A model generated the notes under the pieces. The model had not been told where the DNA came from, searched no databases, and worked only from the letters and a program-made list of their open reading frames with translations. This document shows positions 17,364-62,629 of a stretch of DNA of 64,000 nt, piece after piece. This stretch comes from Mizuhopecten yessoensis. Its lineage: Eukaryota. Position 1 is the stretch's first letter. Each line of letters opens with the position of its first letter. The stretch covers positions 1,171,659-1,235,658 of the forward strand of contig NW_018408881.1 of assembly GCF_002113885.1 (NCBI RefSeq), given 5' to 3'. The translations under genes and the position numbers were made by a program.

Positions 17364-18026
17364 TTACAGAGATACAATGGCTGGAGCATCAGCCTCCCTC
17401 TTCCTCAGAGAAACAATGGCTGGAGCATCAGCCTCCCTCTTCCTCAGAGAAACAATGGCTGGTGCATCGGCCTCCCGCTTTTTCAGGGAAACGATGGCTG
17501 GAGCATCTGCCTCTCTCTTCCTCAGAGAAACAACGGCTGGAGCATCAGCCTCCCTCTTCCTCAGAGAAACAATGGCTGGAGCATCAGCCTCCCTCTTCCT
17601 CAGAGAAACAACGGCTGGGGCATCAGCCTCCCTCTTCTTCAGAGAAACAACGGCTGGAGCATCAGCCTCCCTCTTCCTCAGAGAAACAACGGCTGGAGCA
17701 TCAGCCTCCCTCTTCTTCAGAGAAACAACGACTGGAGCATTAGCCTCCCTCTTCCTCAGAGAAACAATGGCTGGAGCATCGGCCTCCCGCTTCTTTAGAG
17801 ATACAACGGCTGGTGCAGCGAAGGCTACAAAGGGGAAAAAAGATCGATTATTTGAATTTAATTTATATTTTATTTTAATGAATTTTAAATAATAAGTTAT
17901 CAGTATAATAGCTTAAAATATATTTATTAAGTATAAAGAGTTAGTATTTTTTTTTAAAGCAATTGTAAACTCACCAAAAGTACTCAGACACAGCACGGCC
18001 ATGAACGAAATCCACTGAATTTTCAT
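17364..18026 (-). CDS. Secreted multi-copy peptide precursor, 170 aa; CDS complement join(17975..18026, 17364..17824)
   Basis: Exon 2: acceptor TTTCAG (AG 18039-18038), ATG 18026, MKIQWISFMAVLCLSTF, phase-1 donor GTGAGT at 17974. Exon 3: acceptor CTTTTTTCCCCTTTGTAG (AG 17826-17825), reading AFA-APAVVSL then 11 x (RKR or KKR)-EADAPA(I/V)VSL (one unit EANAPVVVSL), TAA at 17366-17364. 52+461=513 nt, in frame. Confidence 0.9.
17367..17815. repeat. 39-bp coding tandem repeat, about 11.5 units
   Basis: Unit CAGAGAAACAA(T/C)GGCTGGAGCATCAGCCTCCCTCTTCCT; encodes the peptide repeats on the minus strand. Confidence 0.97.
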
Positions 18027-26506: not shown

Positions 26507-29500
26507 ATGATGACCGGTAGCGTAGTATTGGTGGTATTTGTGTGTGCTAGGGCAGTGTTAGGCCTGCCTTATCTACGTAAAGCAGACCATTACAATGATT
26601 CTGGGCCGCTCTTAAAGTTACCAGATTTGAACAAAGAAGTGTATTATCAACATATGAAATTACCTCTGCGTACATTTGTCGGAGAAAAGGTTTGTATATC
26701 ATCACCATTCTTGTGATAACAAATTCATTACAAATGGTCCGTATCAAATTAGGGTGTAAGTATAATCGAATAACGATCTTGGGTATATCTGCATGTTTTT
26801 GAATGGTTTTACCATATTTTACAGAAAATTGAATATGGCTGTTCGGCTTTTCCTCTGAAGGCAGACGAATACATTGGTAAGTATTGCTTACTTTATATTT
26901 CAAAAGATTTTACTGTGAAATGAAAGTTTTATGTAATTGCCAATTTTACAAAAATAACTCGTGTCTATGTTTTGAATTAAGATATAGTAATGATTCAGAA
27001 TAAATTCTAAAAAGTGAAATGAGTGTCATGCATTTGTTTTGTGTGGGTTTTTTTCTGTTTCGTAGTTAATGCAAATAAAGATAGATTGTATGTTTTATAT
27101 ATTGTATATATAATTACAACATGTGTGTATAATATCAGCTATACATAACTTATGCTTTTATGTTCATTTGCCGCTGTGAACTAGAACAGCTTACAACGTT
27201 TTATACATTATTACAGCCTGTGTGAAAACTACATGTTATACATAAATACAGCGCGTGTACAAAGTAGTCCCAGACTTGTACTGCTCGTGAAAACAATAGG
27301 TTTGTACTCCGTCCACCAGTCGGCAAGTCCGCCCAACCGGCAGTGCATCATTTTTTTTCTTGGCCATATCTCGGAAACTTTGTCATCTTCAATTTCCAAA
27401 TTTTGTATGTTAATTACTCTTGAGATGATCAAGTTTTGCGTATAAAATCATGTCGTATGTTCAGCTCTATACTATACAAATATATATAGTGTGTCCAATT
27501 CGATACTGAAATCTGATGTTATTTGTTATATATTAACTACGTGTTCTGTACATAACTACCAGTATTGTTGGTATTATATGTTATATACAGGAAATGTTAA
27601 CCACGTGTTGTGTAGGTATTGTATATTATATTAACAACTACATATTGTAAGGATATTATTTGCTATTTGTAATATCAGTCTGTATAGGTATTATCTTATA
27701 TACACCTTCCTCGAGTAAATTTTACTCGCTTGTATAGTGCATCTATTACTTTATTATACATGTATGTCTTTCCTCTCTAAGTCATGAGTCAATTTTAATT
27801 GTTATTTACAGTCGAGTATTTGCCCATCGGAGAACGAGATGATGTTTATCACATAACAGTCGATGTATGCGACGTCCCCTATGATGAAGCTCCTATTTGG
27901 TGAGTTGTTCTGTCATTTGCAAATGAGAACTTAGTGATGTTAATATTTATGTTAATATGCTAAATGGAATATCTGTAGATGTTGTTAGATCTTGGTGTGA
28001 AATAGAGGTAATTATTTGCAAATTTTGAGCATAACACTTACCAGCCCGAGAGCCCCCTATAACGTCAAAGAGGAAGTGACGTCACTGAATATTAGTATAG
28101 CTTTATCGAAATCTCAATATTATCTGTATTATACGTACATGTAAGCTATACAAAACAAAACAAGAACAAGTAAATTCACAACTGCAGAACAAAAAGAGAC
28201 ATGTTTGGAACAGTCGGAAGTATGATTCATTATTATCATGGTGTTGATATTTCGAACATATCTATTTTGGTTTATTTATTTATTCATTTCATATATTATT
28301 CGCCGAATATTTCAGTAAATTGCCATCAAGCAATTTGGATCCGTACTTTCTCGTCCAATTTAAACATGGTAGATGCTAAATTTTCCACGTGTCACCCCGA
28401 TTCCTTATATATCTCACCCCTGCAGGTCGGGATCGAGAAAAGAATGCACCTGCTGTTGACCACTGCCATGTATCGTTCGAGACTCATGTGGAAGCTCCCT
28501 TCAGAATTGGGGATTTTGTTTTGTACTTTTTATTAGATGACACGAAAGCGACCAACAAAAATTCTGCTGCACTCATTACAATATTTAGGATCTTCCTTTT
28601 CTTTCTACTTCTAACTACCTTTTATTTCCTAGCGTCTTGCTTGGTTCACCCGTTGTCAGTAAAATTTGAACGGGCGGAATGCTGTGCTGGGTGCCTTCGG
28701 TATGGTATTTCAGTGAGGTAGCACTATAAAGTCGGCATTAGATCCGCGCTATCACAAGGAGGCAACTACGCCAACATACCTTGTTTCCGGTTCACATACA
28801 CGCTTACACAAAACACATGGAGGTACGTCCTTAAATTACCTTAGCTGTTAATAGGAAGTTAAACAATATGAAACCAAACCAAACCGAAAATGTCCCCAAC
28901 CCATTCACCACTCCTTTTTCGTTTCTTACCCGTTTTATAGAGGTACAAAATACAATACATTTTGTTTAACTATGTTTCAGGGAATGCGTTGACCCGACGC
29001 ACGTTTGTAAAGATCACAAGAGAGAATTCCTGTATTCCTGGACGAACGGGGCCCCCGGTTGGACCCTACCAGAAAGTAAGTCACCGACGTACTGTTATGA
29101 ATTCTTTTTCGTGAAGGATTGTTTTTTACTTTAATTTGCGGGGACACTCATTTGAAAAATTAAATTTCCTCAAACAATAATTGAAAATATAATCATAACC
29201 AATATTGAAAAAACATCCTCGCTTTAGCAAGTTTATGTATTCGCAAATAAAGAACGATATATTTTCGAAATTAACTGCACTGAACAAAAGGTGATTTAAA
29301 GAGTATAATCAACAACGATTACAACCTGTATTATAATATTCTTACTTTATCCGATACATTGAAATAAAATTGTGTTTAGTCTAAACCATTTTGTAGGATT
29401 TGTATGACGGGAGATAACAGATAACACTGCTGTTGCCTTGCCTTTTCTTCTTCTTACTTATGTCGATTTTTAGTTGAAATATATTTTTTCTTGATGGCGC

Positions 29501-32500
29501 TGTTTAATATTTGCTTTTTCACCTTTTCATTCATTCGAATGTATATAGTCAATAAAACACTCTATTAAAAATATTTGTACTACATACTTGTTAGGTGGTC
29601 ATGACGTCATGACATTGTGACATTATAATAATAAGAAGATAGCACTAACCGATGATTGCTATTGAACTAACGAAGTACTACTTTCAATTTTAACAAAAAC
29701 TGTGATTGAAATAAAAGAATGTATCATCATATTGTGTGAATCTTGAAAACTACAATCGTGAAAATCTTTGTTTTATTTTATATATCAGATACCGGAATAT
29801 ACACCGGTAATAAACCCCGGTATGTTATAATACAAGTCCATGGACGTGACGACATCTCAGGTAAATTCACCTTTGGATAATTTAAATAAGGAAAGTAAAG
29901 GATACAATTTAAAACGTGCATCCCAATGCAATTACACAATGTAAGTTATACATGTGTGTAAACATAGCATCGAGGTCGTTCAATTTCCCTGAGCATGTTT
30001 AGGTAAAAATTTATGATGTACATTTCCGTATACGCTATATACACGATAAAATGGGGCTTCGTCTCGATATGGTACTATGTACATGTATATATGTACACAA
30101 GACAAAAATGTTAATACCGAAGTTTGTCCACAGCATATGTTGTTAGGGCCCCATATAGAGGATGCGGGTGAGCGATACTAATTCGAATTTTCGTCTGTCA
30201 CAATAAAACAAGGTATCAACTGACCAAAGGTCAAGGTCACTGGGTCAAAGGTCCAGGTCAAATTTTGTGTCTTCCCTGATGAACATTTTGTTATGACATT
30301 ATGAAGCAAAGATGGTTGGAATTTAACAAAGAGTCAGCTGACTTAAGGCCAGGGTCACTGGATCAAAGATTAAGGTAAAATTCAGTATCTTTTCACTGGG
30401 GAACATTTTGCTATGACACTTTGAAGCAATGTTGGTCAGAATTAAACAAGGAGTCATTTGACCAGAGGTCAAGGTTACGTGTTCCAAAGGTTCAATGTCA
30501 AGGTAAGGTTTTGTATTTTTCACTGATGGACATTTTGTTATGATATTATGAAGCAAATTTGGTTGGAATTGAAAAATGAGTCAACTGACCAAAGATCAGG
30601 GTCACTAAGTTAAAGGTCAAGGTCATTTGGGTCCAAAGGTCAAAGACAAAGTTGATCTCTTACTTTGACCCTGGCTTTTGATGGGGGAAGTATTTAAGGC
30701 TAACAAGTGAGTATTGCACCGGTATTTAAATTTCTGTAAGCCCAGCAAATATGGAAGTGGAAAGAAACAAGACTCACATCATAGTACATGTAAAATGTCT
30801 ATTTTGCTTCCTTGCAAATGTTTTTGAAGTCCAAATGTCAAACTTCAAGCTCAGCTATATGGGCAGATTGCTTCTTGATGATTACGGGGGATATATTGCC
30901 ACAAGACGAGGCCCTTACTGACCTGTCAGTGTTCTAGTTTCACCTACGTTGACCAAACTTGCTAAAGTTTTAATGTATCTTGGGAGGCATGAGTGTCGAA
31001 TTCTAAATTCGGGTCTCGGGTCCCACTATATAAAGCGATATGGCCCTTTGTTAATATACAGGATTTTTTCTATTGTCTAATAAGGGGAGACATATGTTTT
31101 TGTTCACAAAACCAAAATTCTAGTTAAAAAGTGTGACACATTTATTGAGAGAGTACACAGTATATAAGAATACGTATTCAAGATAAATTCTTATACATGT
31201 GCAGCTTTCTTTTTAATATCTTTCGACAACAATATGGGATATGCGTCGATTCTGTTAATAAAAGAATGATTATGTACGCATGTTATGTACATGATAAATT
31301 TGTAATCCAAGTTTCCTCGAGTTTTTTCTTCTCGTTTTCAGAGGAACGTGTCTCGGACTTCGCACACATGCGTTTGAAAATCCGGACCACCCGGTGTGTA
31401 TCACTCCTACTAACTATTAATCAAACACACATTACAAAATGTTAAACAACTTTTAACACATTTTCTTATAATTATATAAACGTCACTCATTCAACATCGA
31501 TGTCTACTTTGTGTTATCCTCTTTGTTATGATGCCCAATAATAGACAATAGACTGTTACTGATATTAACCCGACAACAAATATATTTAATATTAATAATA
31601 CTTTCATAAAATTATTTTTATCCGCTGCTATATTTATACTAAGTAAACATAATTATCGAACTGTGCTATCTTGTTTCCACCAGTCCCCGACTAGCTGCAG
31701 CTGTTAGTAGATACGCCGGCACCGGCTCTATACCTCCTCACGTAGAAAGTAAGTATATTATCATGTACATATTGATGAATAATACGTACGAATAATCACT
31801 ATGATCACATGATGTGATGTATTTTCGTATACAAATCCATATATAATAAACTAAAATTTGCAATGGTGTTTTTTTTTCAAAAAATAAAACAAAGTTTCAT
31901 TTTGTTGAATTATTGGTGATTGAAAGTCTTTCAAGGCGTATTTTCAATATCGCCGATATATGACATGAATGAAACAGAATGCACTTTATCAGAACTAGGT
32001 GATCATTTTTGAATAAACGAATTTTAAGATGAACTCAAATAAAATATAAAAGAATAACAATAAAAAATAATTTTAAAAAGCAGATATCAAAATTGTTAAA
32101 ACAGAGTAACACAGGGAAGTTTTTCACTTACACCATTAAAAAGTACATATAGAATAGTATCAGGTGTTCCGAATTCAATTAAAAAGACAAGCACTTATCT
32201 AGGTCACAATTATATAATATGATAACTTCAGTTTTGTTGAGGAAGGTACATGCACTGTGTTTATTCTACCTTTAGATTTCACCGTTGACACTGCGTGTGT
32301 ATGGAACAGGACAACACCTACGCCTATATTAGCTTACGGAATACATACACACGGTAGAGGTCAGTCATTATGTACCTGACGTCAAGTACACATACAGGAA
32401 ATCTTAGGGACGACCTCTTCATTCAAGTTGACGTGTGTCTTTTACTTTTACGTTTGTTTTATTTCATTTCAACAAAGTTTATTCATGACGTTGTATGAAT

Positions 32501-35500
32501 TGGATCGAACAACAGGCTATGCCTATATCAGTTTTCTCCTGCATGCATTTGTATTAATCAGCATATATATATTATAATTTATAGTGAAACGAAAGATGTA
32601 AAAAAAACAGACAACTTATATATAAAACAGATATCAATGTGCAAGTCATGTGGTAAAGGTAAGATAATTCTAACTGCTTCTGAAAGTTCACAAGTCAAGC
32701 TGTGCTCCTTCCTGACCTCACCGGAGTAATGAGTGAGTTTAAGTCATATTCCTTTACTAGATTCTCCCCGGGAGTTCAAAATCCACACAGAGTGACTCAT
32801 AGATAGTTGAATATTCGGCTTATTTAATTAAATATTATTAATAAGCTATGTCAATATTGTATGGTATATCAATATTCACATTAATAATACGTTAAGAATA
32901 TAATTATACAACTACTTGTTATTAATTACAAAATACAAGTCCATGTTGATTTAAGGGTGAGTATATTATATTAACGTTTGTTTGATAACATTTTTAATTT
33001 TATGTTTTTATCGACAATTTGTCGGCCCTAATGACTAACACAGATTGGCTGTTGACCATATAATGATAATAACAAAACTCTTCATTACTGCATTACCTGT
33101 TGTCAGTCTAGGTAATTTGTAATACTTACATATATATATATATATATATATATAACATTTTTATAATGTCATGTATTTACTGAAATCAGCTCCTGCATAT
33201 ATTACTTTTATTAAACATATACAACTGGTCTTAGTTTTTATTTACGAGAGTGTCAATGTCTTTATAATTGTGACTTGTTTTAAAACAATAAATCCATATA
33301 ATATCATCGTACCAATGTCGAGATTTTGGGTTTAAGTTAATTTTAGATCTAAAATTTAGTTAAGGATATGCAGACAAATACACAAGCATTTGAATATGAC
33401 GTAATGACAATTGTTATTTTAAAATGGAAAATTTAAGTTGTATTGAACTTCATGAGAACTCGTTTAAATTATGAATTAAGATCGATATCAAATTACAGAC
33501 ACGATTCTCACAAAAACTGTAACGTCCTAAGAGGTTTCTCCGCAATGATTTTAGGTGTGAAATGGTTAGGGCAATGCCAATAATATTTTGACGTAAGGGA
33601 TCGGGCCGTTGCGGTTTATGGGCAAATCGTCTGCCCCCACCCATCCCTCCTGTTTCATTTTATACTCTTTTCTAATATTAGGAGTTGCATTGTCCGGTTA
33701 CATTGTGAGAAAAGGCAAATGGATCGAGATTGGACGTGGTGATCCGGTGTACCCACTGGTAAGTTAGTGTGTCGATATCAGAATATGTGGCATATAGTAT
33801 TGATAGAACAAAATATGAAAAGGATTCAATGTTATTTTAATCTTAGGTGTATCAAACTTTCACTATTTATTCCATGTACGTTTAAAATTGTATTTGCATC
33901 GGTTGAACACGGAACATTTATTTCGCCTACCAATGGAGCGTGTACATACACAATCTGTCGAATAGTTATTAGCTGTTAGCTTCTTCCTCCAACTAGTAAC
34001 TACCAGTCCGTCTTGAAACGTTGCAACACATTAACATGTACATATTTTATCTGAAAAATGTAATTCTATTTTTTCAAAATTGATTTATGTTGTTGAAGAT
34101 ACAAAACGGAGTTGATTTACTGTATTCGTAGTAAAATCTATAAAATAAAATTGTGTATCATTATTACAGACAATGTTTGACATCACAGAGAGAAATATTT
34201 GGCTTCAACCCGGAGATGTTGTAGTAAGTACTGAATGTTTATTTCAATAAAGCAGCACCAGATTTTTTTTGTATGCATTAACATTATGCGGTCGAGGGAA
34301 ACAGTTCATCTGGTGGGTCCCAACTCCGAGGGAAAATGGGTTTGACTGTTGACTGATAAGGCATGAAACAACTGTTTTGTTACTTGATCAATGAAAAACA
34401 AAAATTTGAGTAAGTCACAATCCAACATTTCAAAAAAAAACAAAAAAACTGGAACACTTATAGCTAGTGGTAATGAATATGTAGGTTTTGCACCACTCCG
34501 TGTAAATTCAGGGGATACCGTCTCACCGACGCAGTCTCATATTAATATAATGTAACAAATCAATGTTTACTAAACAAATAAACAACAAATTAATGTCCTT
34601 TCTAGCTAGTGGTAATGAATGAAAAATGTTTCATGTAAACCATATCTGACTTACAGCATGGAATTTTTGTGTACGTAGTCCTGCATAAAAACCTTTGAGG
34701 TGCTCATTCAATGTTTGTACTTCTGCCGACTCAAAGTCGGTTATTGGTATTTTCTTTGCGTCACATAATGCGGCTAAAATTATGACGGCCCCCTTTATAA
34801 TATTCTTCGTGTTAGCAGCGTCATGGTTCTCAATCAGTTGAGGTAAGGATTCATCACTGATTTCTTCAAACCTGTCCATGTCGAATGTACCGACAGACGA
34901 CCGTCAACAATCCAGTACCAAAAACGCTTGATCATCGGGGTGCTTGTAATTATAGGTGCTTTCGATTACCTAACACGTGACCAGTCAACAGTCGTAGGGT
35001 AGCAAGCACCAGTTCATCACGTGACCAGTCAACAGTCGTAGGGTAGCAAGCACCGATTCATCACGTGACCAGTCAACATTTTTACGGTAGCACACATTAG
35101 CTATAGTTCGTTTGGTGAATTGTCTGGGAAACAGTTGAAATTGATTAATATGCATTTATATAGCGTGTCAGGTAACAATTTATACTGTTTCATATAATCC
35201 TTCCCCTATGGTGTACTGTGAAATCAGATATTTCGTGGGGCCCACATTTCGTGGTTTCCCGAAAAATAATTCATGAGGACATGAATTCATGGATTACAAG
35301 TACCCACTAATACGGAGAATTGCTTTATGTCAAACTTGAATTACTCAGTAGACCTTTGAATTCGTGGAGGATTACCCACGAACTCAACAAAATTAAAGAC
35401 CCTTCGAAAATGAGTGATTTCAAAGTATTTCAACATTTGCTTAGAAACACATTAGATGTGTATTTTCATTCCTTTGATAAACAGTATATCTAATGTGTCC

Positions 35501-36329
35501 TTACGTGATGAAACGGCCATATAGTGAAGTAAAAATGTAGGTTTTGTTCAGCTTCTTGCATTGAAAGTTTGAAGTGTTTAAATTGGTGCTTCCTTTTTAG
35601 GTATATCTACTTATTATTTGAATGATTTAATTTTGCATTTATCCTGGTTCCTTTTATTTAATTCAAATTTACGCAACATATGCCTTGTTATCCACCTGAA
35701 TTTAAGGTAATGTTTCCAATACATTGTATGTTCAGTGCCAAATGTATCAAATCTGTGTATTACGTATCTAGGCAACGAGATGTACCTACCGCAATACCGG
35801 AAACACACGAATCCAGATGGGGTAAGACTGTTAAAAGATTTCTCTCTGTAATGTAGGCAAGGTCAAATGAGAAATGTTTGAATTGAAAACATATTTGAGA
35901 AAATGCTTTAAAATATTGATATGTTGTCACTACGAGTTATCCATACCTCGGTACGTTGGTAGTGGATAAGTGTAATTTTGTAGAAGACCAGTGTAAGTTT
36001 ATAGTACACCAGTGTAATTTTTAAGAGGACCAGTGACAGTATATCTGATCTCTTTGTTCACTTGTGATCAATAAAATATGTATATAATTTATTGACTCCA
36101 TATTACTTATATTTTCAGGTTCAACCACGTCAATGAGATGTGTAACTATTTTTTGTATTACGGTGTTTCTTCCGATTCAATTGCTGAGGCCAAGTCACTA
36201 GCGTGTTCAAGAGAGGGGGGAGGATGGGACCAACTGTTTGACAACATCCCAGCTGACGCAAGCGATCCTAGTGGCGACACGGAACAGTCTCGCTTTGTCA
36301 AAAAGTACCATCTTACCAGAAGTTACTGA
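26507..36329 (+). CDS. Divergent monofunctional peptidylglycine alpha-hydroxylating monooxygenase (PHM)-like copper monooxygenase, 360 aa, secreted; 12 exons: 26507-26689, 26825-26876, 27812-27899, 28981-29075, 29789-29860, 31342-31393, 31684-31748, 32276-32359, 33682-33758, 34170-34223, 35772-35821, 36119-36329
   Basis: All introns are GT-AG with compatible phases; total 1083 nt. Signal peptide MMTGSVVLVVFVCARAVLG. PHM-colinear motifs: EYGC, DVYHITVDVC, FLYSWTNGAPGWTLP, YVIIQVH, SIPP, LAYGIHTHGRG, SGYIVRKGKWIEIGRGDP, PGDVVATRC, NEMCNYFLYY, LFDNIPADA. Eight PHM core Cys are retained. AATAAA at 36525-36530. Confidence 0.92.
28641..28890 (+). mobile_element. SINE (dominant family, 5'-truncated) in PHM-like intron 3
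   Basis: Core plus AAACC tail. Confidence 0.8.
30110..31125 (+). repeat. HINE-like element with about 120-bp internal tandem repeats
   Basis: Four units containing TGACC...GGTCA(A/G)GGTCAC at about 30217, 30335, 30455 and 30582; 3' end ...TTCTAGTT. Confidence 0.55.
34631..34879 (-). mobile_element. Crypton-like (DUF3504-associated tyrosine recombinase) N-terminal remnant in PHM-like intron 10
   Basis: RFEEISDESLPQLIENHDAANTK...TDFE...LNEHLKGFYAGLRTQK matches my recollection of CryptonA/KCTD1/ZMYM-type N-termini; a 45-bp tandem repeat with CACGTG lies upstream (34973-35080). Confidence 0.6.
35215..35427. mobile_element. MITE
   Basis: Termini TACTGTGAAATCA...TGATTTCAAAGTA. Confidence 0.55.
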
Positions 36330-61756: not shown

Positions 61757-62629
61757 NNNNNNNNNNNNNNNNNNNNNNNNNNNNNNNNNNNNNNNNNNNN
61801 NNNNNNNNNNNNNNNNNNNNNNNNNNNNNNNNNNNNNNNNNNNNNNNNNNNNNNNNNNNNNNNNNNNNNNNNNNNNNNNNNNNNNNNNNNNNNNNNNNNN
61901 NNNNNNNNNNNNNNNNNNNNNNNNNNNNNNNNNNNNNNNNNNNNNNNNNNNNNNNNNNNNNNNNNNNNNNNNNNNNNNNNNNNNNNNNNNNNNNNNNNNN
62001 NNNNNNNNNNNNNNNNNNNNNNNNNNNNNNNNNNNNNNNNNNNNNNNNNNNNNNNNNNNNNNNNNNNNNNNNNNNNNNNNNNNNNNNNNNNNNNNNNNNN
62101 NNNNNNNNNNNNNNNNNNNNNNNNNNNNNNNNNNNNNNNNNNNNNNNNNNNNNNNNNNNNNNNNNNNNNNNNNNNNNNNNNNNNNNNNNNNNNNNNNNNN
62201 NNNNNNNNNNNNNNNNNNNNNNNNNNNNNNNNNNNNNNNNNNNNNNNNNNNNNNNNNNNNNNNNNNNNNNNNNNNNNNNNNNNNNNNNNNNNNNNNNNNN
62301 NNNNNNNNNNNNNNNNNNNNNNNNNNNNNNNNNNNNNNNNNNNNNNNNNNNNNNNNNNNNNNNNNNNNNNNNNNNNNNNNNNNNNNNNNNNNNNNNNNNN
62401 NNNNNNNNNNNNNNNNNNNNNNNNNNNNNNNNNNNNNNNNNNNNNNNNNNNNNNNNNNNNNNNNNNNNNNNNNNNNNNNNNNNNNNNNNNNNNNNNNNNN
62501 NNNNNNNNNNNNNNNNNNNNNNNNNNNNNNNNNNNNNNNNNNNNNNNNNNNNNNNNNNNNNNNNNNNNNNNNNNNNNNNNNNNNNNNNNNNNNNNNNNNN
62601 NNNNNNNNNNNNNNNNNNNNNNNNNNNNN
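61757..62629. other. Assembly gap (873 N)
   Basis: Run of N. Confidence 1.

What the first reader, a model, noticed from the sequence alone, without database searches (positions are those of the whole stretch)
26507..36329. PHM-like enzyme with a remodelled active site
By-eye alignment to rat PHM numbering. Intact: CuM ligands H242, H244 and M314, plus H108, H172, Q170, Y79, N316 and four disulfide pairs. Changed: CuH ligand H107 to Tyr (TAT, 27847-27849), substrate-anchoring R240 to Gly (GGA, 32338-32340), and Y318 to Phe (TTT, 36150-36152, with a Tyr one position earlier). There is no PAL or transmembrane domain. Known: R240 and Y318 bind the peptide C-terminal carboxylate, and the CuH histidines are needed for normal electron transfer. 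Inference: a clean 12-exon frame with targeted changes suggests new substrate or chemistry, or a copper-binding pseudoenzyme. Extra His residues (PTHVCKDH, FNHVNEM) might substitute as ligands. Each change is a single base from the canonical codon, so read support matters.
Basis: partly seen in the sequence, partly recalled or inferred. Interest (0 to 1): 0.8.

Follow-up and report, generated by a model that had tools for sequence, protein, structure and literature searches.

The report
Scallop PHM-like enzyme paired with peptides
This is a real, expressed scallop gene for a secreted copper enzyme related to the one that amidates hormones; its substrate clamp and one copper ligand have been replaced and kept that way by selection, and in most scallop loci checked it sits beside a gene for many copies of one short peptide, so it may carry out an undescribed peptide modification.

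Summary
The 12-exon frame translates exactly to an NCBI protein of Mizuhopecten yessoensis (P0019, 360 aa, "PAM B-like"). HMMER against rat PHM places Tyr at H107, Gly at R240 and Phe at Y318. H108, H172, H242, H244, M314, Q170, N316 and four disulfides are intact. There is a signal peptide but no PAL or membrane span.

DNA contigs from three studies and spliced RNA contigs support the codons and the splicing.

The changes are not private to this gene. R240 is lost in all 13 clade members I collected (bivalves and Lingula). Y318F and H107Y (HHM to YHI) are shared by two scallop paralogue groups, with synonymous codon differences between species. dN/dS is about 0.10-0.16, so the gene is not decaying. 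A canonical PAM with H107, R240, Y318 and NHL repeats lies elsewhere (C76735).

In six of eight group A/B loci checked, across four genera, the enzyme is head-to-head with a precursor of 11-72 copies of a peptide ending in Ser-Leu, followed by KKR and never Gly.

Best reading: an active monooxygenase of altered specificity that probably tailors those peptides. The scan noted this same stretch before (s1-528011), not on other DNA. Function is untested.

The parts
26507..26689 (+). Exon 1: start codon, signal peptide, N-terminal linker
   Evidence: The exact threading of P0019 places it here. It holds the protein's only hydrophobic segment, residues 1-24.
26825..26876 (+). Exon 2: holds the Tyr equivalent to rat Y79 and the Cys equivalent to C81
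   Evidence: tblastn to paralogue P0002 gives 76% identity.
27812..27899 (+). Exon 3: CuH motif YHI in place of HHM. Tyr91 codon TAT at 27847-27849 (rat H107); His92 (rat H108)
   Evidence: HMMER alignment to rat PHM. DNA contigs of 3 studies show no difference at the codon, and an RNA contig joins exons 3-4-5. Tyr is conserved in orthologues as TAT/TAC.
28981..29075 (+). Exon 4: two disulfide Cys (rat C126, C131) and the conserved W..NGAPGW stretch
   Evidence: The RNA contig piece 28980-29075 has no differences.
29789..29860 (+). Exon 5: Gln155 and His157 (rat Q170, H172)
   Evidence: RNA contig piece 29789-29860.
31342..31393 (+). Exon 6 (52 nt): strand after the CuH loop; rat C186 position is Phe
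   Evidence: It is present in P0019 and has the same 52-nt length in all 7 genes threaded. The sequence is conserved in orthologues. No RNA contig was seen across it. My first guess of a single exon starting at 31644 was wrong.
31684..31748 (+). Exon 7
   Evidence: An RNA contig joins 31685-31748 to 32276-32360. Threading agrees.
32276..32359 (+). Exon 8: Gly224 codon GGA at 32338-32340 (rat R240); His226 and His228 (rat H242, H244)
   Evidence: DNA contigs (3 studies) and the RNA contig show no difference at the codon. Gly in all group A/B genes as GGA/GGG/GGT.
33682..33758 (+). Exon 9
34170..34223 (+). Exon 10
35772..35821 (+). Exon 11: Cys278 (rat C293)
36119..36329 (+). Exon 12: His294, Met298 (rat M314), Asn300 (N316), Tyr301, Phe302 codon TTT at 36150-36152 (rat Y318). 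It also holds the clade-specific C-terminal tail and the stop at 36327-36329.
   Evidence: Phe is TTT/TTC in all group A/B genes. This stretch was not covered by read laying.
17364..17912 (-). Repeat-bearing exon of the divergently transcribed neighbour gene. It encodes about 11-12 copies of a 10-residue unit ending in Ser-Leu, each followed by (K/R)KR, with no Gly before the basic site.
   Evidence: Translation and unit counts. Homologous precursors lie head-to-head with the enzyme's orthologues and paralogues in three other genera.

Best explanation
The window encodes a real, spliced and expressed gene for a soluble secreted member of the PHM branch of the copper type II ascorbate-dependent monooxygenases. 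It belongs to a lophotrochozoan clade of about 340-360-aa PHM-only proteins. That clade lost the arginine that salt-bridges the substrate's C-terminal carboxylate.

Within the clade it belongs to a scallop-specific pair of paralogue groups (A and B). These also replaced Tyr318 by Phe and turned the CuH motif HHM into YHI.

Because the other five copper ligands, Gln170, Asn316 and the fold are strictly kept under strong purifying selection, I infer that it is still a working O2-activating copper enzyme. The CuM site would be canonical. The electron-donor site would be built from two His plus Tyr, or two His alone. Its substrate would no longer be a glycine-extended peptide.

The most likely substrate is the product of the divergently transcribed neighbour gene. 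That gene is a prohormone-like precursor giving many copies of a short peptide ending in Ser-Leu after cleavage at (K/R)KR.

Shown: the gene model, residue states, conservation, selection, fold, canonical PAM elsewhere, and conserved gene pairing. Inferred: catalytic competence, copper binding at the Tyr site, the substrate and the reaction.
For: Gene and family.
- P0019 equals the 12-exon translation.
- Both Pfam domains are over their cut-offs: PF03712 85.6 bits, PF01082 35.8 bits.
- The best solved relative is rat PHM at E about 4e-33, against DBH at 7e-13.
- The AlphaFold model has pLDDT 80.4 and TM 0.80-0.82 to PHM structures.
- Spliced RNA contigs exist, and DNA contigs of three studies agree.

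Selection.
- NG86 dN/dS is 0.10-0.16 within group A and 0.09 in group B. ML omega is 0.144 over 7 coding sequences.
- The exon structure is identical in all 7 genes.
- H92, Q155, H157, H226, H228, M298, N300 and the 8 Cys are invariant in 13 clade members, where only 50 of 360 positions are invariant.

Remodelling is maintained.
- Tyr is TAT/TAC, Gly is GGA/GGG/GGT and Phe is TTT/TTC across species and both paralogue groups.
- The M. yessoensis group B copy is also intact, with Tyr, Gly and Phe.

Loss of glycine-peptide recognition.
- R240 forms the salt bridge to the substrate carboxylate, with Tyr318 and Asn316 as secondary contacts (PMC12164859).
- The canonical scallop PAM keeps HH, R-x-H-x-H and MCN-x-Y and has NHL repeats downstream.

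Pairing. A head-to-head precursor was found in six loci:
- window: 11 units, 5.8 kb upstream
- Ylistrum A: 59 units
- Pecten A: 35 units, about 13.7 kb upstream
- Pecten B: 70 units
- Argopecten B: 66 units
- Ylistrum B: 72 units
All units end in Ser-Leu (some Ser-Val), followed by KKR, never Gly. The two closest other precursor copies in this genome lie on the scaffold that carries the group B and C enzymes.
Against: - No activity, copper content or peptide product has been measured.
- In rat PHM, H107A, H108A and H172A are each inactive, and H107A crystals lack CuH (PMC6123673). A Tyr at this position could therefore abolish electron delivery.
- Argopecten's group A copy has His at this position, so Tyr is not obligatory.
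- The pairing was not found within 10 kb of Argopecten A. In M. yessoensis group B the precursor copies lie 23-45 kb away on the same strand.
- Adjacency could reflect a shared regulatory domain rather than an enzyme-substrate relation. Co-expression was not tested.
- L-residue C-termini do not fit the known pro-S hydrogen geometry of PHM (own knowledge).
- dS values of 1.0-1.5 are near saturation, so the dN/dS figures are approximate.
Confidence: 0.45

Rival explanations
1. It is an active monooxygenase with a new substrate, but the neighbour peptides are not that substrate. The enzyme would hydroxylate some other secreted peptide, protein or small molecule. The conserved adjacency would reflect only a shared chromatin or enhancer domain, or co-duplication of a block.
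For: The evidence for catalytic competence is the same as in the best explanation. The deeper clade members (Lingula, Solemya) lack R240 yet show no such precursor within 10 kb, so the loss of glycine-carboxylate binding predates the pairing. Group C (P0014), with an intact HHM, also borders a precursor in Pecten, tail to tail.
Against: The head-to-head arrangement survives in six loci of four genera and across the A/B duplication, while introns and spacers changed greatly: the gene is 6.4-27.8 kb long and the spacer 5.4-13.7 kb. The clade that gained H107Y is the one that carries the head-to-head pairing (Y318F is also seen in group C member P0014).
Confidence: 0.2
2. It is a pseudoenzyme. 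The protein would keep the PHM fold and perhaps one copper, but not turn over. It would serve as a secreted copper- or peptide-binding protein, for example a chaperone or carrier for the abundant neighbour peptides.
For: Mutation of any CuH histidine to Ala inactivates rat PHM, and H107A crystals lack CuH (PMC6123673). Both H107 and M109 of the HHM motif are changed. The carboxylate anchor is gone.
Against: All five remaining copper ligands plus Q170 and N316 are invariant in 13 sequences, where only about 14% of positions are invariant. A pure binding protein has no obvious need for them. Tyr is a competent copper ligand in other enzymes (own knowledge). His and Tyr interchange at this site within group A without other visible decay.
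Confidence: 0.22
3. It is an ordinary amidating PHM paralogue. It would still hydroxylate glycine-extended peptides, and the three substitutions would be tolerated neutral variation.
For: NCBI names it PAM B-like. The CuM site and N316 are canonical. Monofunctional secreted PHMs exist in other invertebrates (own knowledge).
Against: R240, the salt-bridge partner of the substrate carboxylate, is absent from the whole clade. Y318 is absent here too. A canonical PAM with all residues is present elsewhere in the genome. The substitutions are conserved, not drifting.
Confidence: 0.08
4. It is an artefact or a decaying gene: assembly or sequencing errors at three codons, or an unexpressed pseudogene.
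For: Each change is one base from the canonical codon. The RNA contig on exon 3 has 3 unplaced differences.
Against: Independent DNA contigs of three studies agree at two of the codons. The same residues occur in other species with synonymous differences. There are spliced RNA contigs, a clean frame and omega of about 0.14.
Confidence: 0.01

Closest known systems
Rat/vertebrate PHM catalytic core of PAM (PDB 1PHM, 1OPM, 1SDW)
   Same: Same two-domain beta-sandwich fold: TM 0.80-0.82, rmsd 3.2-3.4 A over about 313 columns. Same CuM ligands (H242, H244, M314). H108, H172, Q170, N316 and four of the five disulfides are also kept.
   Different: About 26-27% identity. H107 is Tyr and M109 is Ile (HHM to YHI). 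R240 is Gly. Y318 is Phe. The C47-C186 disulfide is lost. There is no PAL, stalk or membrane anchor. There is a clade-specific conserved C-terminal tail, and His at rat position 310.
Canonical bifunctional PAM of the same scallop (G000:C76735, minus strand, about 804.7-817.1 kb)
   Same: Same family and the same copper-ligand motifs.
   Different: The canonical gene keeps HH-I-LLFGC, R-A-H-A-H and MCN-F-Y, and is followed by NHL (PAL-type) repeats. The window gene has none of these substrate-clamp residues and no PAL.
Scallop paralogue group C (P0002 of M. yessoensis, P0014 of Pecten maximus) and the deeper clade members (Tegillarca P0007, Solemya P0021, Lingula P0020)
   Same: Same 12-exon structure where checked (the two group C genes), similar length, signal peptide and C-terminal tail. 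R240 is already replaced by Ala or Ser.
   Different: They keep His at 107 (Lys in Tegillarca) and mostly keep Tyr318. They are 38-43% identical to the window protein. No head-to-head precursor was found for Lingula or Solemya.
Dopamine beta-hydroxylase / tyramine beta-hydroxylase / MOXD1
   Same: Same superfamily and two-copper logic. They show that the scaffold can hydroxylate substrates other than peptidyl-glycine.
   Different: A much weaker match (E 7e-13, TM 0.59 by the query). The window protein has no DOMON domain. The scallop's own DBH/MOXD-like genes are separate loci (C942, C5485, C5553).
Fungal RiPP clusters with KEX2-processed repeat precursors and copper or other oxidases (ustiloxin/phomopsin type; own knowledge, not tested here)
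   Same: A precursor with many copies of a short core peptide separated by dibasic sites, encoded next to an oxidative tailoring enzyme.
   Different: This is an animal, and the enzyme family is different. It is a two-gene pair rather than a multi-gene cluster. No modified product is known.

Membership tests
Copper type II ascorbate-dependent monooxygenases (Pfam PF01082 + PF03712) | Both Pfam domains score over their gathering cut-offs | tested here: met
   P0019: PF03712 85.6 bits (cut-off 23), PF01082 35.8 bits (cut-off 30). Single exons give no hit.
Copper type II ascorbate-dependent monooxygenases (Pfam PF01082 + PF03712) | Two-domain beta-sandwich fold of the PHM catalytic core | tested here: met
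   Model pLDDT 80.4. Foldseek gives TM 0.80-0.82 to rat PHM entries, with DBH next.
Copper type II ascorbate-dependent monooxygenases (Pfam PF01082 + PF03712) | CuM ligands: two His and one Met | tested here: met
   H226, H228 and M298 align to H242, H244 and M314. They are invariant in 13 clade members.
Copper type II ascorbate-dependent monooxygenases (Pfam PF01082 + PF03712) | CuH ligands: three His | tested here: not met
   Tyr91 stands at H107. H92 and H157 are kept. Tyr is conserved in scallop groups A and B.
Peptidylglycine alpha-hydroxylating monooxygenase in the functional sense (EC 1.14.17.3) | Closest solved relative is PHM rather than DBH | tested here: met
   E about 4e-33 to PHM chains against 6.7e-13 to DBH.
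Peptidylglycine alpha-hydroxylating monooxygenase in the functional sense (EC 1.14.17.3) | Arg240 salt bridge to the C-terminal carboxylate of the glycine-extended peptide | tested here: not met
   Gly224 (GGA 32338-32340). Role of R240 from PMC12164859.
Peptidylglycine alpha-hydroxylating monooxygenase in the functional sense (EC 1.14.17.3) | Secondary substrate contacts Tyr318 and Asn316 | tested here: not met
   Asn300 is kept but Tyr318 is Phe302, so the feature as a pair is not met.
Peptidylglycine alpha-hydroxylating monooxygenase in the functional sense (EC 1.14.17.3) | Hydroxylates C-terminal glycine of peptides | not testable with these tools
   Needs an enzyme assay.
Enzyme-precursor (RiPP-like) gene pair | Precursor with repeated core peptides between processing sites | tested here: met
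   11 units in the window and 35-72 in other species, each followed by (K/R)KR.
Enzyme-precursor (RiPP-like) gene pair | Adjacency of precursor and tailoring enzyme conserved across species | tested here: met
   Head-to-head in six of eight group A/B loci examined, in four genera and both paralogue groups. Exceptions: Argopecten A, and M. yessoensis B.
Enzyme-precursor (RiPP-like) gene pair | The enzyme modifies the precursor's peptides | not testable with these tools
   Needs biochemistry or peptidomics.
Enzyme-precursor (RiPP-like) gene pair | Co-expression of the two genes | not tested

The most novel reading that the evidence does not exclude
Scallops may possess an animal counterpart of a RiPP pathway. 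In this reading, a secreted copper monooxygenase descended from PHM, using a His2-Tyr (possibly redox-active Tyr) site in place of the classical CuH, performs a glycine-independent oxidative modification of a dedicated, genomically linked multi-copy peptide. The modification could be hydroxylation at or near the conserved C-terminal Ser-Leu, or oxidative removal of the terminal Leu to leave an amide.
Probability: 0.25. Interest if true: 0.9.

Novelty: new variant of a known kind. Interest (0 to 1): 0.7.

Why it matters
PHM is the only enzyme known to start peptide amidation. Its three-His CuH site and Arg240 clamp are treated as essential and "highly conserved".

This is a natural clade that has kept a Tyr at H107 and has no clamp, under strong purifying selection. 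That makes it a ready-made experiment on two questions: how much of the CuH site is really needed, and what else the scaffold can oxidise.

The conserved pairing with a high-copy peptide precursor gives a concrete candidate substrate. The question of whether animals have dedicated peptide-tailoring oxidases beyond amidation therefore becomes directly testable with one recombinant protein and one synthetic decapeptide.

It also warns that automatic names such as "PAM B-like" hide functional divergence in molluscan genomes.

Tried and rejected
1. Exon-by-exon Pfam and PDB searches by reference gave no family hit. The exons are too short and divergent.
2. A by-eye exon at about 30785-30918 was rejected. 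It has no usable donor before a stop, and it lies in a very high-copy repeat (depth in the thousands).
3. My own 11-exon model, with one exon at 31644-31748, was wrong. P0019 and the orthologues show two exons, 31342-31393 and 31684-31748.
4. The best Pfam loci of the genome (C942, C5485, C5553) were taken for the canonical PAM at first. Their motifs are DBH/MOXD-like.
5. C262 and C3024 gave nothing canonical. A further expanded group (C4169, C76647, C4270, C1728, C3864, C5580, C5589) has HH-M-LLYGC and N-H-M-H-Y motifs and was not resolved.
6. The canonical PAM was finally found through co-occurrence of NHL repeats on C76735.
7. The 'extra His' compensation idea was rejected on conservation grounds.
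8. I searched for the precursor near Lingula, Solemya and Argopecten A, and within C5357:370-440 kb. None was found.
9. Literature searches for the peptides, for scallop PHM paralogues and for R240/Y318 variants found nothing on this clade.
10. The joined spliced model was never sent to a search tool as letters. It was built only inside scripts for local comparison, and the database protein P0019, shown to be identical to it, was used instead.
Full report
**Source and gene model.** The window is G000:C5554:1171659-1235658 of a 988-Mb, 82,659-contig assembly. Protein names returned later identify it as the Yesso scallop, Mizuhopecten yessoensis.

I first tried to rebuild the gene from open frames and splice sites. 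Ten exons were clear and were supported by tblastn to relatives. My guess for the stretch between 29860 and 32276, a single exon starting at 31644, was wrong.

Pfam and PDB gave nothing for single exons. The last exon alone, searched against 1.84 billion representatives, found full-length relatives P0001, P0002 and P0007. A word search with these found P0019, an NCBI protein of the same species.

P0019 is identical, residue for residue, to the translation of 12 exons, all with AG/GT borders:
- 26507-26689
- 26825-26876
- 27812-27899
- 28981-29075
- 29789-29860
- 31342-31393
- 31684-31748
- 32276-32359
- 33682-33758
- 34170-34223
- 35772-35821
- 36119-36329

The joined model itself was never sent to a search tool. 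It was assembled only inside scripts, and P0019 served for all whole-protein searches.

**Observation.** HMMER aligns P0019 to rat PHM chains at E about 4e-33, against DBH at 7e-13. Both Pfam domains pass their cut-offs.

In that alignment:
- Tyr91 (TAT 27847-27849) stands at rat H107.
- Gly224 (GGA 32338-32340) stands at R240.
- Phe302 (TTT 36150-36152) stands at Y318, with Tyr301 before it.
- H108, Q170, H172, H242, H244, M314, N316 and Y79 are kept.
- Four disulfide pairs are kept. The C47-C186 pair is absent.

The only hydrophobic segment is at residues 1-24, and the protein ends after the PHM core. An AlphaFold model (pLDDT 80.4) matches rat PHM structures at TM 0.80-0.82.

**Read support and expression.** Nineteen public runs hold at least half of the sampled words of the stretch; all 20 holders come from 8 studies.

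DNA contigs of X1, X5 and X7, from three studies, span the Tyr and Gly codons and list no difference there. RNA-library run X20 has one contig joining 27811-27898 | 28980-29075 | 29789-29860. It has another joining 31685-31748 | 32276-32360 and running on. These are spliced transcripts using exactly the predicted borders.

Three limits remain. The Phe codon and exons 9-12 were outside the stretch. Exon 6 has no RNA contig. Three differences in the RNA piece on exon 3 were not placed by the tool.

**The substitutions are a clade history.** Aligning the relatives and reading their codons from genomic loci threaded with the exact proteins gives the states below.

| Group | Members | Rat 107-109 | Rat 240 | Rat 318 |
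|---|---|---|---|---|
| A | window, Ylistrum balloti P0024, Pecten maximus P0025, Argopecten irradians P0022 | YHI (Tyr TAT/TAC); Argopecten has His at 107 | Gly | Phe |
| B | P0026, P0027, P0028, and an intact M. yessoensis copy at C5357:383410-389051 | YHI (Tyr TAT/TAC) | Gly | Phe |
| C | P0002, P0014 | HHM | Ala | Leu or Phe |
| Deeper members | Tegillarca P0007, Solemya P0021, Lingula P0020, metatranscriptome P0001 | His (Lys in Tegillarca) | Ala or Ser | Tyr |

Across groups A and B the Gly codon is GGA, GGG or GGT and the Phe codon is TTT or TTC. The order of events is therefore: loss of the arginine clamp, then loss of Tyr318, then H107Y together with M109I.

All seven genes threaded share the same 12-exon structure, with identical internal exon lengths.

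**Selection.** Pairwise NG86 dN/dS is 0.10-0.16 within group A, 0.09 in group B and 0.17 in group C. A codon-model ML estimate over the seven sequences gives omega 0.144. dS is 1.0-1.5, so the ratios are rough, but they are nowhere near 1.

In the 13-sequence alignment only 50 of 360 positions are invariant. Yet H92, Q155, H157, H226, H228, M298, N300 and all eight Cys are among them. This pattern fits a metal site that is still used.

**A canonical PAM exists elsewhere.** The strongest Pfam loci of the genome turned out to be DBH/MOXD-like.

The canonical gene lies on C76735, minus strand. Exons there encode HH-I-LLFGC (817046), Q-I-H (815196), F-R-A-H-A-H-S-L-G (812871) and D-E-M-C-N-F-Y (810663). 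NHL repeats of the PAL type follow at 807502 and 804704. Ordinary amidation is therefore provided for, and the window gene is an extra, diverged paralogue.

**The neighbour.** On the minus strand at 17364-17912 I read about 11-12 copies of a 10-residue unit ending in Ser-Leu. Each is followed by (K/R)KR, with no Gly before the basic site.

I then examined the flanks of the relatives. A homologous precursor lies head-to-head with the enzyme in:
- Ylistrum A: 59 units
- Pecten A: 35 units, about 13.7 kb away, beyond a minisatellite
- Pecten B: 70 units, with group C gene P0014 on its other side
- Argopecten B: 66 units
- Ylistrum B: 72 units

The units differ between loci. All begin with Glu-Ala after the cleavage site and end in a hydrophobic pair plus Ser-Leu (occasionally Ser-Val).

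Nothing similar was found within 10 kb of Argopecten A, Lingula or Solemya. In M. yessoensis the two closest other precursor copies sit at 344 and 360 kb of scaffold C5357. That scaffold carries enzymes B and C, but the copies are not head-to-head with them.

The pairing thus holds in six of eight group A/B loci, across four genera and across a gene duplication. Meanwhile introns and spacers changed several-fold.

**Interpretation.** R240 makes the salt bridge to the carboxylate of the glycine-extended substrate, and Tyr318 and Asn316 make secondary contacts (PMC12164859). An enzyme lacking both Arg and Tyr should not bind such substrates in the known way.

H107A, H108A and H172A rat PHM are inactive, and H107A crystals lack CuH (PMC6123673). 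The Tyr is therefore the riskiest change for catalysis.

Against a dead enzyme stand three facts: the strict conservation of all other ligands, the maintenance of Tyr itself through synonymous change, and its interchange with His in one lineage.

My estimates:
- real, expressed, selected PHM-family gene with these residues: about 0.98
- still a working oxidase: about 0.65
- overall, a working oxidase that acts on the neighbour's peptides: about 0.45 (the confidence given for the best explanation)

The reaction itself is unknown. Hydroxylation at or near the C-terminal Ser-Leu, or oxidative dealkylation leaving an amide, are chemically conceivable but untested.

**Known or new.** The gene is annotated under an automatic name. 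I found no paper in the held library on this clade, its active-site changes or the peptides.

This scan had flagged the same stretch once before (s1-528011).

I class it as a new variant of a known kind: a PHM-family enzyme with a naturally remodelled CuH site and substrate pocket, linked to a candidate substrate gene.

Noticed in passing
G000:C82630:1542-2872 (not in the window; protein P0023): A 3.7-kb contig carries a 5' copy of the window gene (exons 1-3, 87-93% identical), also with Tyr at the H107 position. It is an uncollapsed haplotype or a partial duplicate.
   Followed up: partly
window 28280-28880 and 30080-31280: Two intronic stretches reach contig depths in the thousands to over 100,000 in every run, RNA included. 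They are very high-copy interspersed repeats. One of them produced a spurious PHM-looking open frame at about 30785-30918.
   Followed up: partly
P0019 residues 335-356 (window 36249-36314): A C-terminal tail beyond the rat PHM core is conserved in all 13 clade members (invariant Pro335, Gly343, Thr345, Gln347) and is predicted helical. Its function is unknown.
   Followed up: no
P0019 His294 (window 36126-36128): His at rat position 310, four residues before the CuM methionine, is present in at least 90% of clade members, whereas rat has Ser. It is a candidate new substrate or metal contact.
   Followed up: partly
G000:C5357:399810-400016 (+): An isolated copy of the last exon of the group B enzyme (75% identical to Pecten P0026), with no other exons nearby and next to an assembly gap at 396382-396448. 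It is a gene fragment or a misassembly.
   Followed up: no
G000: C942, C5485 (five loci), C5553, C4169, C76647, C4270, C1728, C3864, C5580, C5589 and others: The scallop genome holds more than 50 exon-level matches to each Cu2_monooxygen Pfam domain. They include a five-gene DBH/MOXD-like cluster on C5485 and a separate expanded group with HH-M-LLYGC and N-H-M-H-Y motifs, whose nature I did not resolve.
   Followed up: partly
L072 (Argopecten irradians CM084272.1), protein P0029: An annotated 293-aa protein joins the N-terminal half of the group A enzyme to an unrelated DUF8401 region. It is a chimeric model or a partial duplicate beside the Argopecten group A gene.
   Followed up: no
L057:144-1391 (Pecten maximus): A 415-aa 'gene' between the Pecten group A enzyme and its precursor is a pure 12-residue tandem repeat. 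It is probably a minisatellite called as a gene.
   Followed up: no
window 61757-62629: A run of 873 N (assembly gap or mask); left untouched.
   Followed up: no
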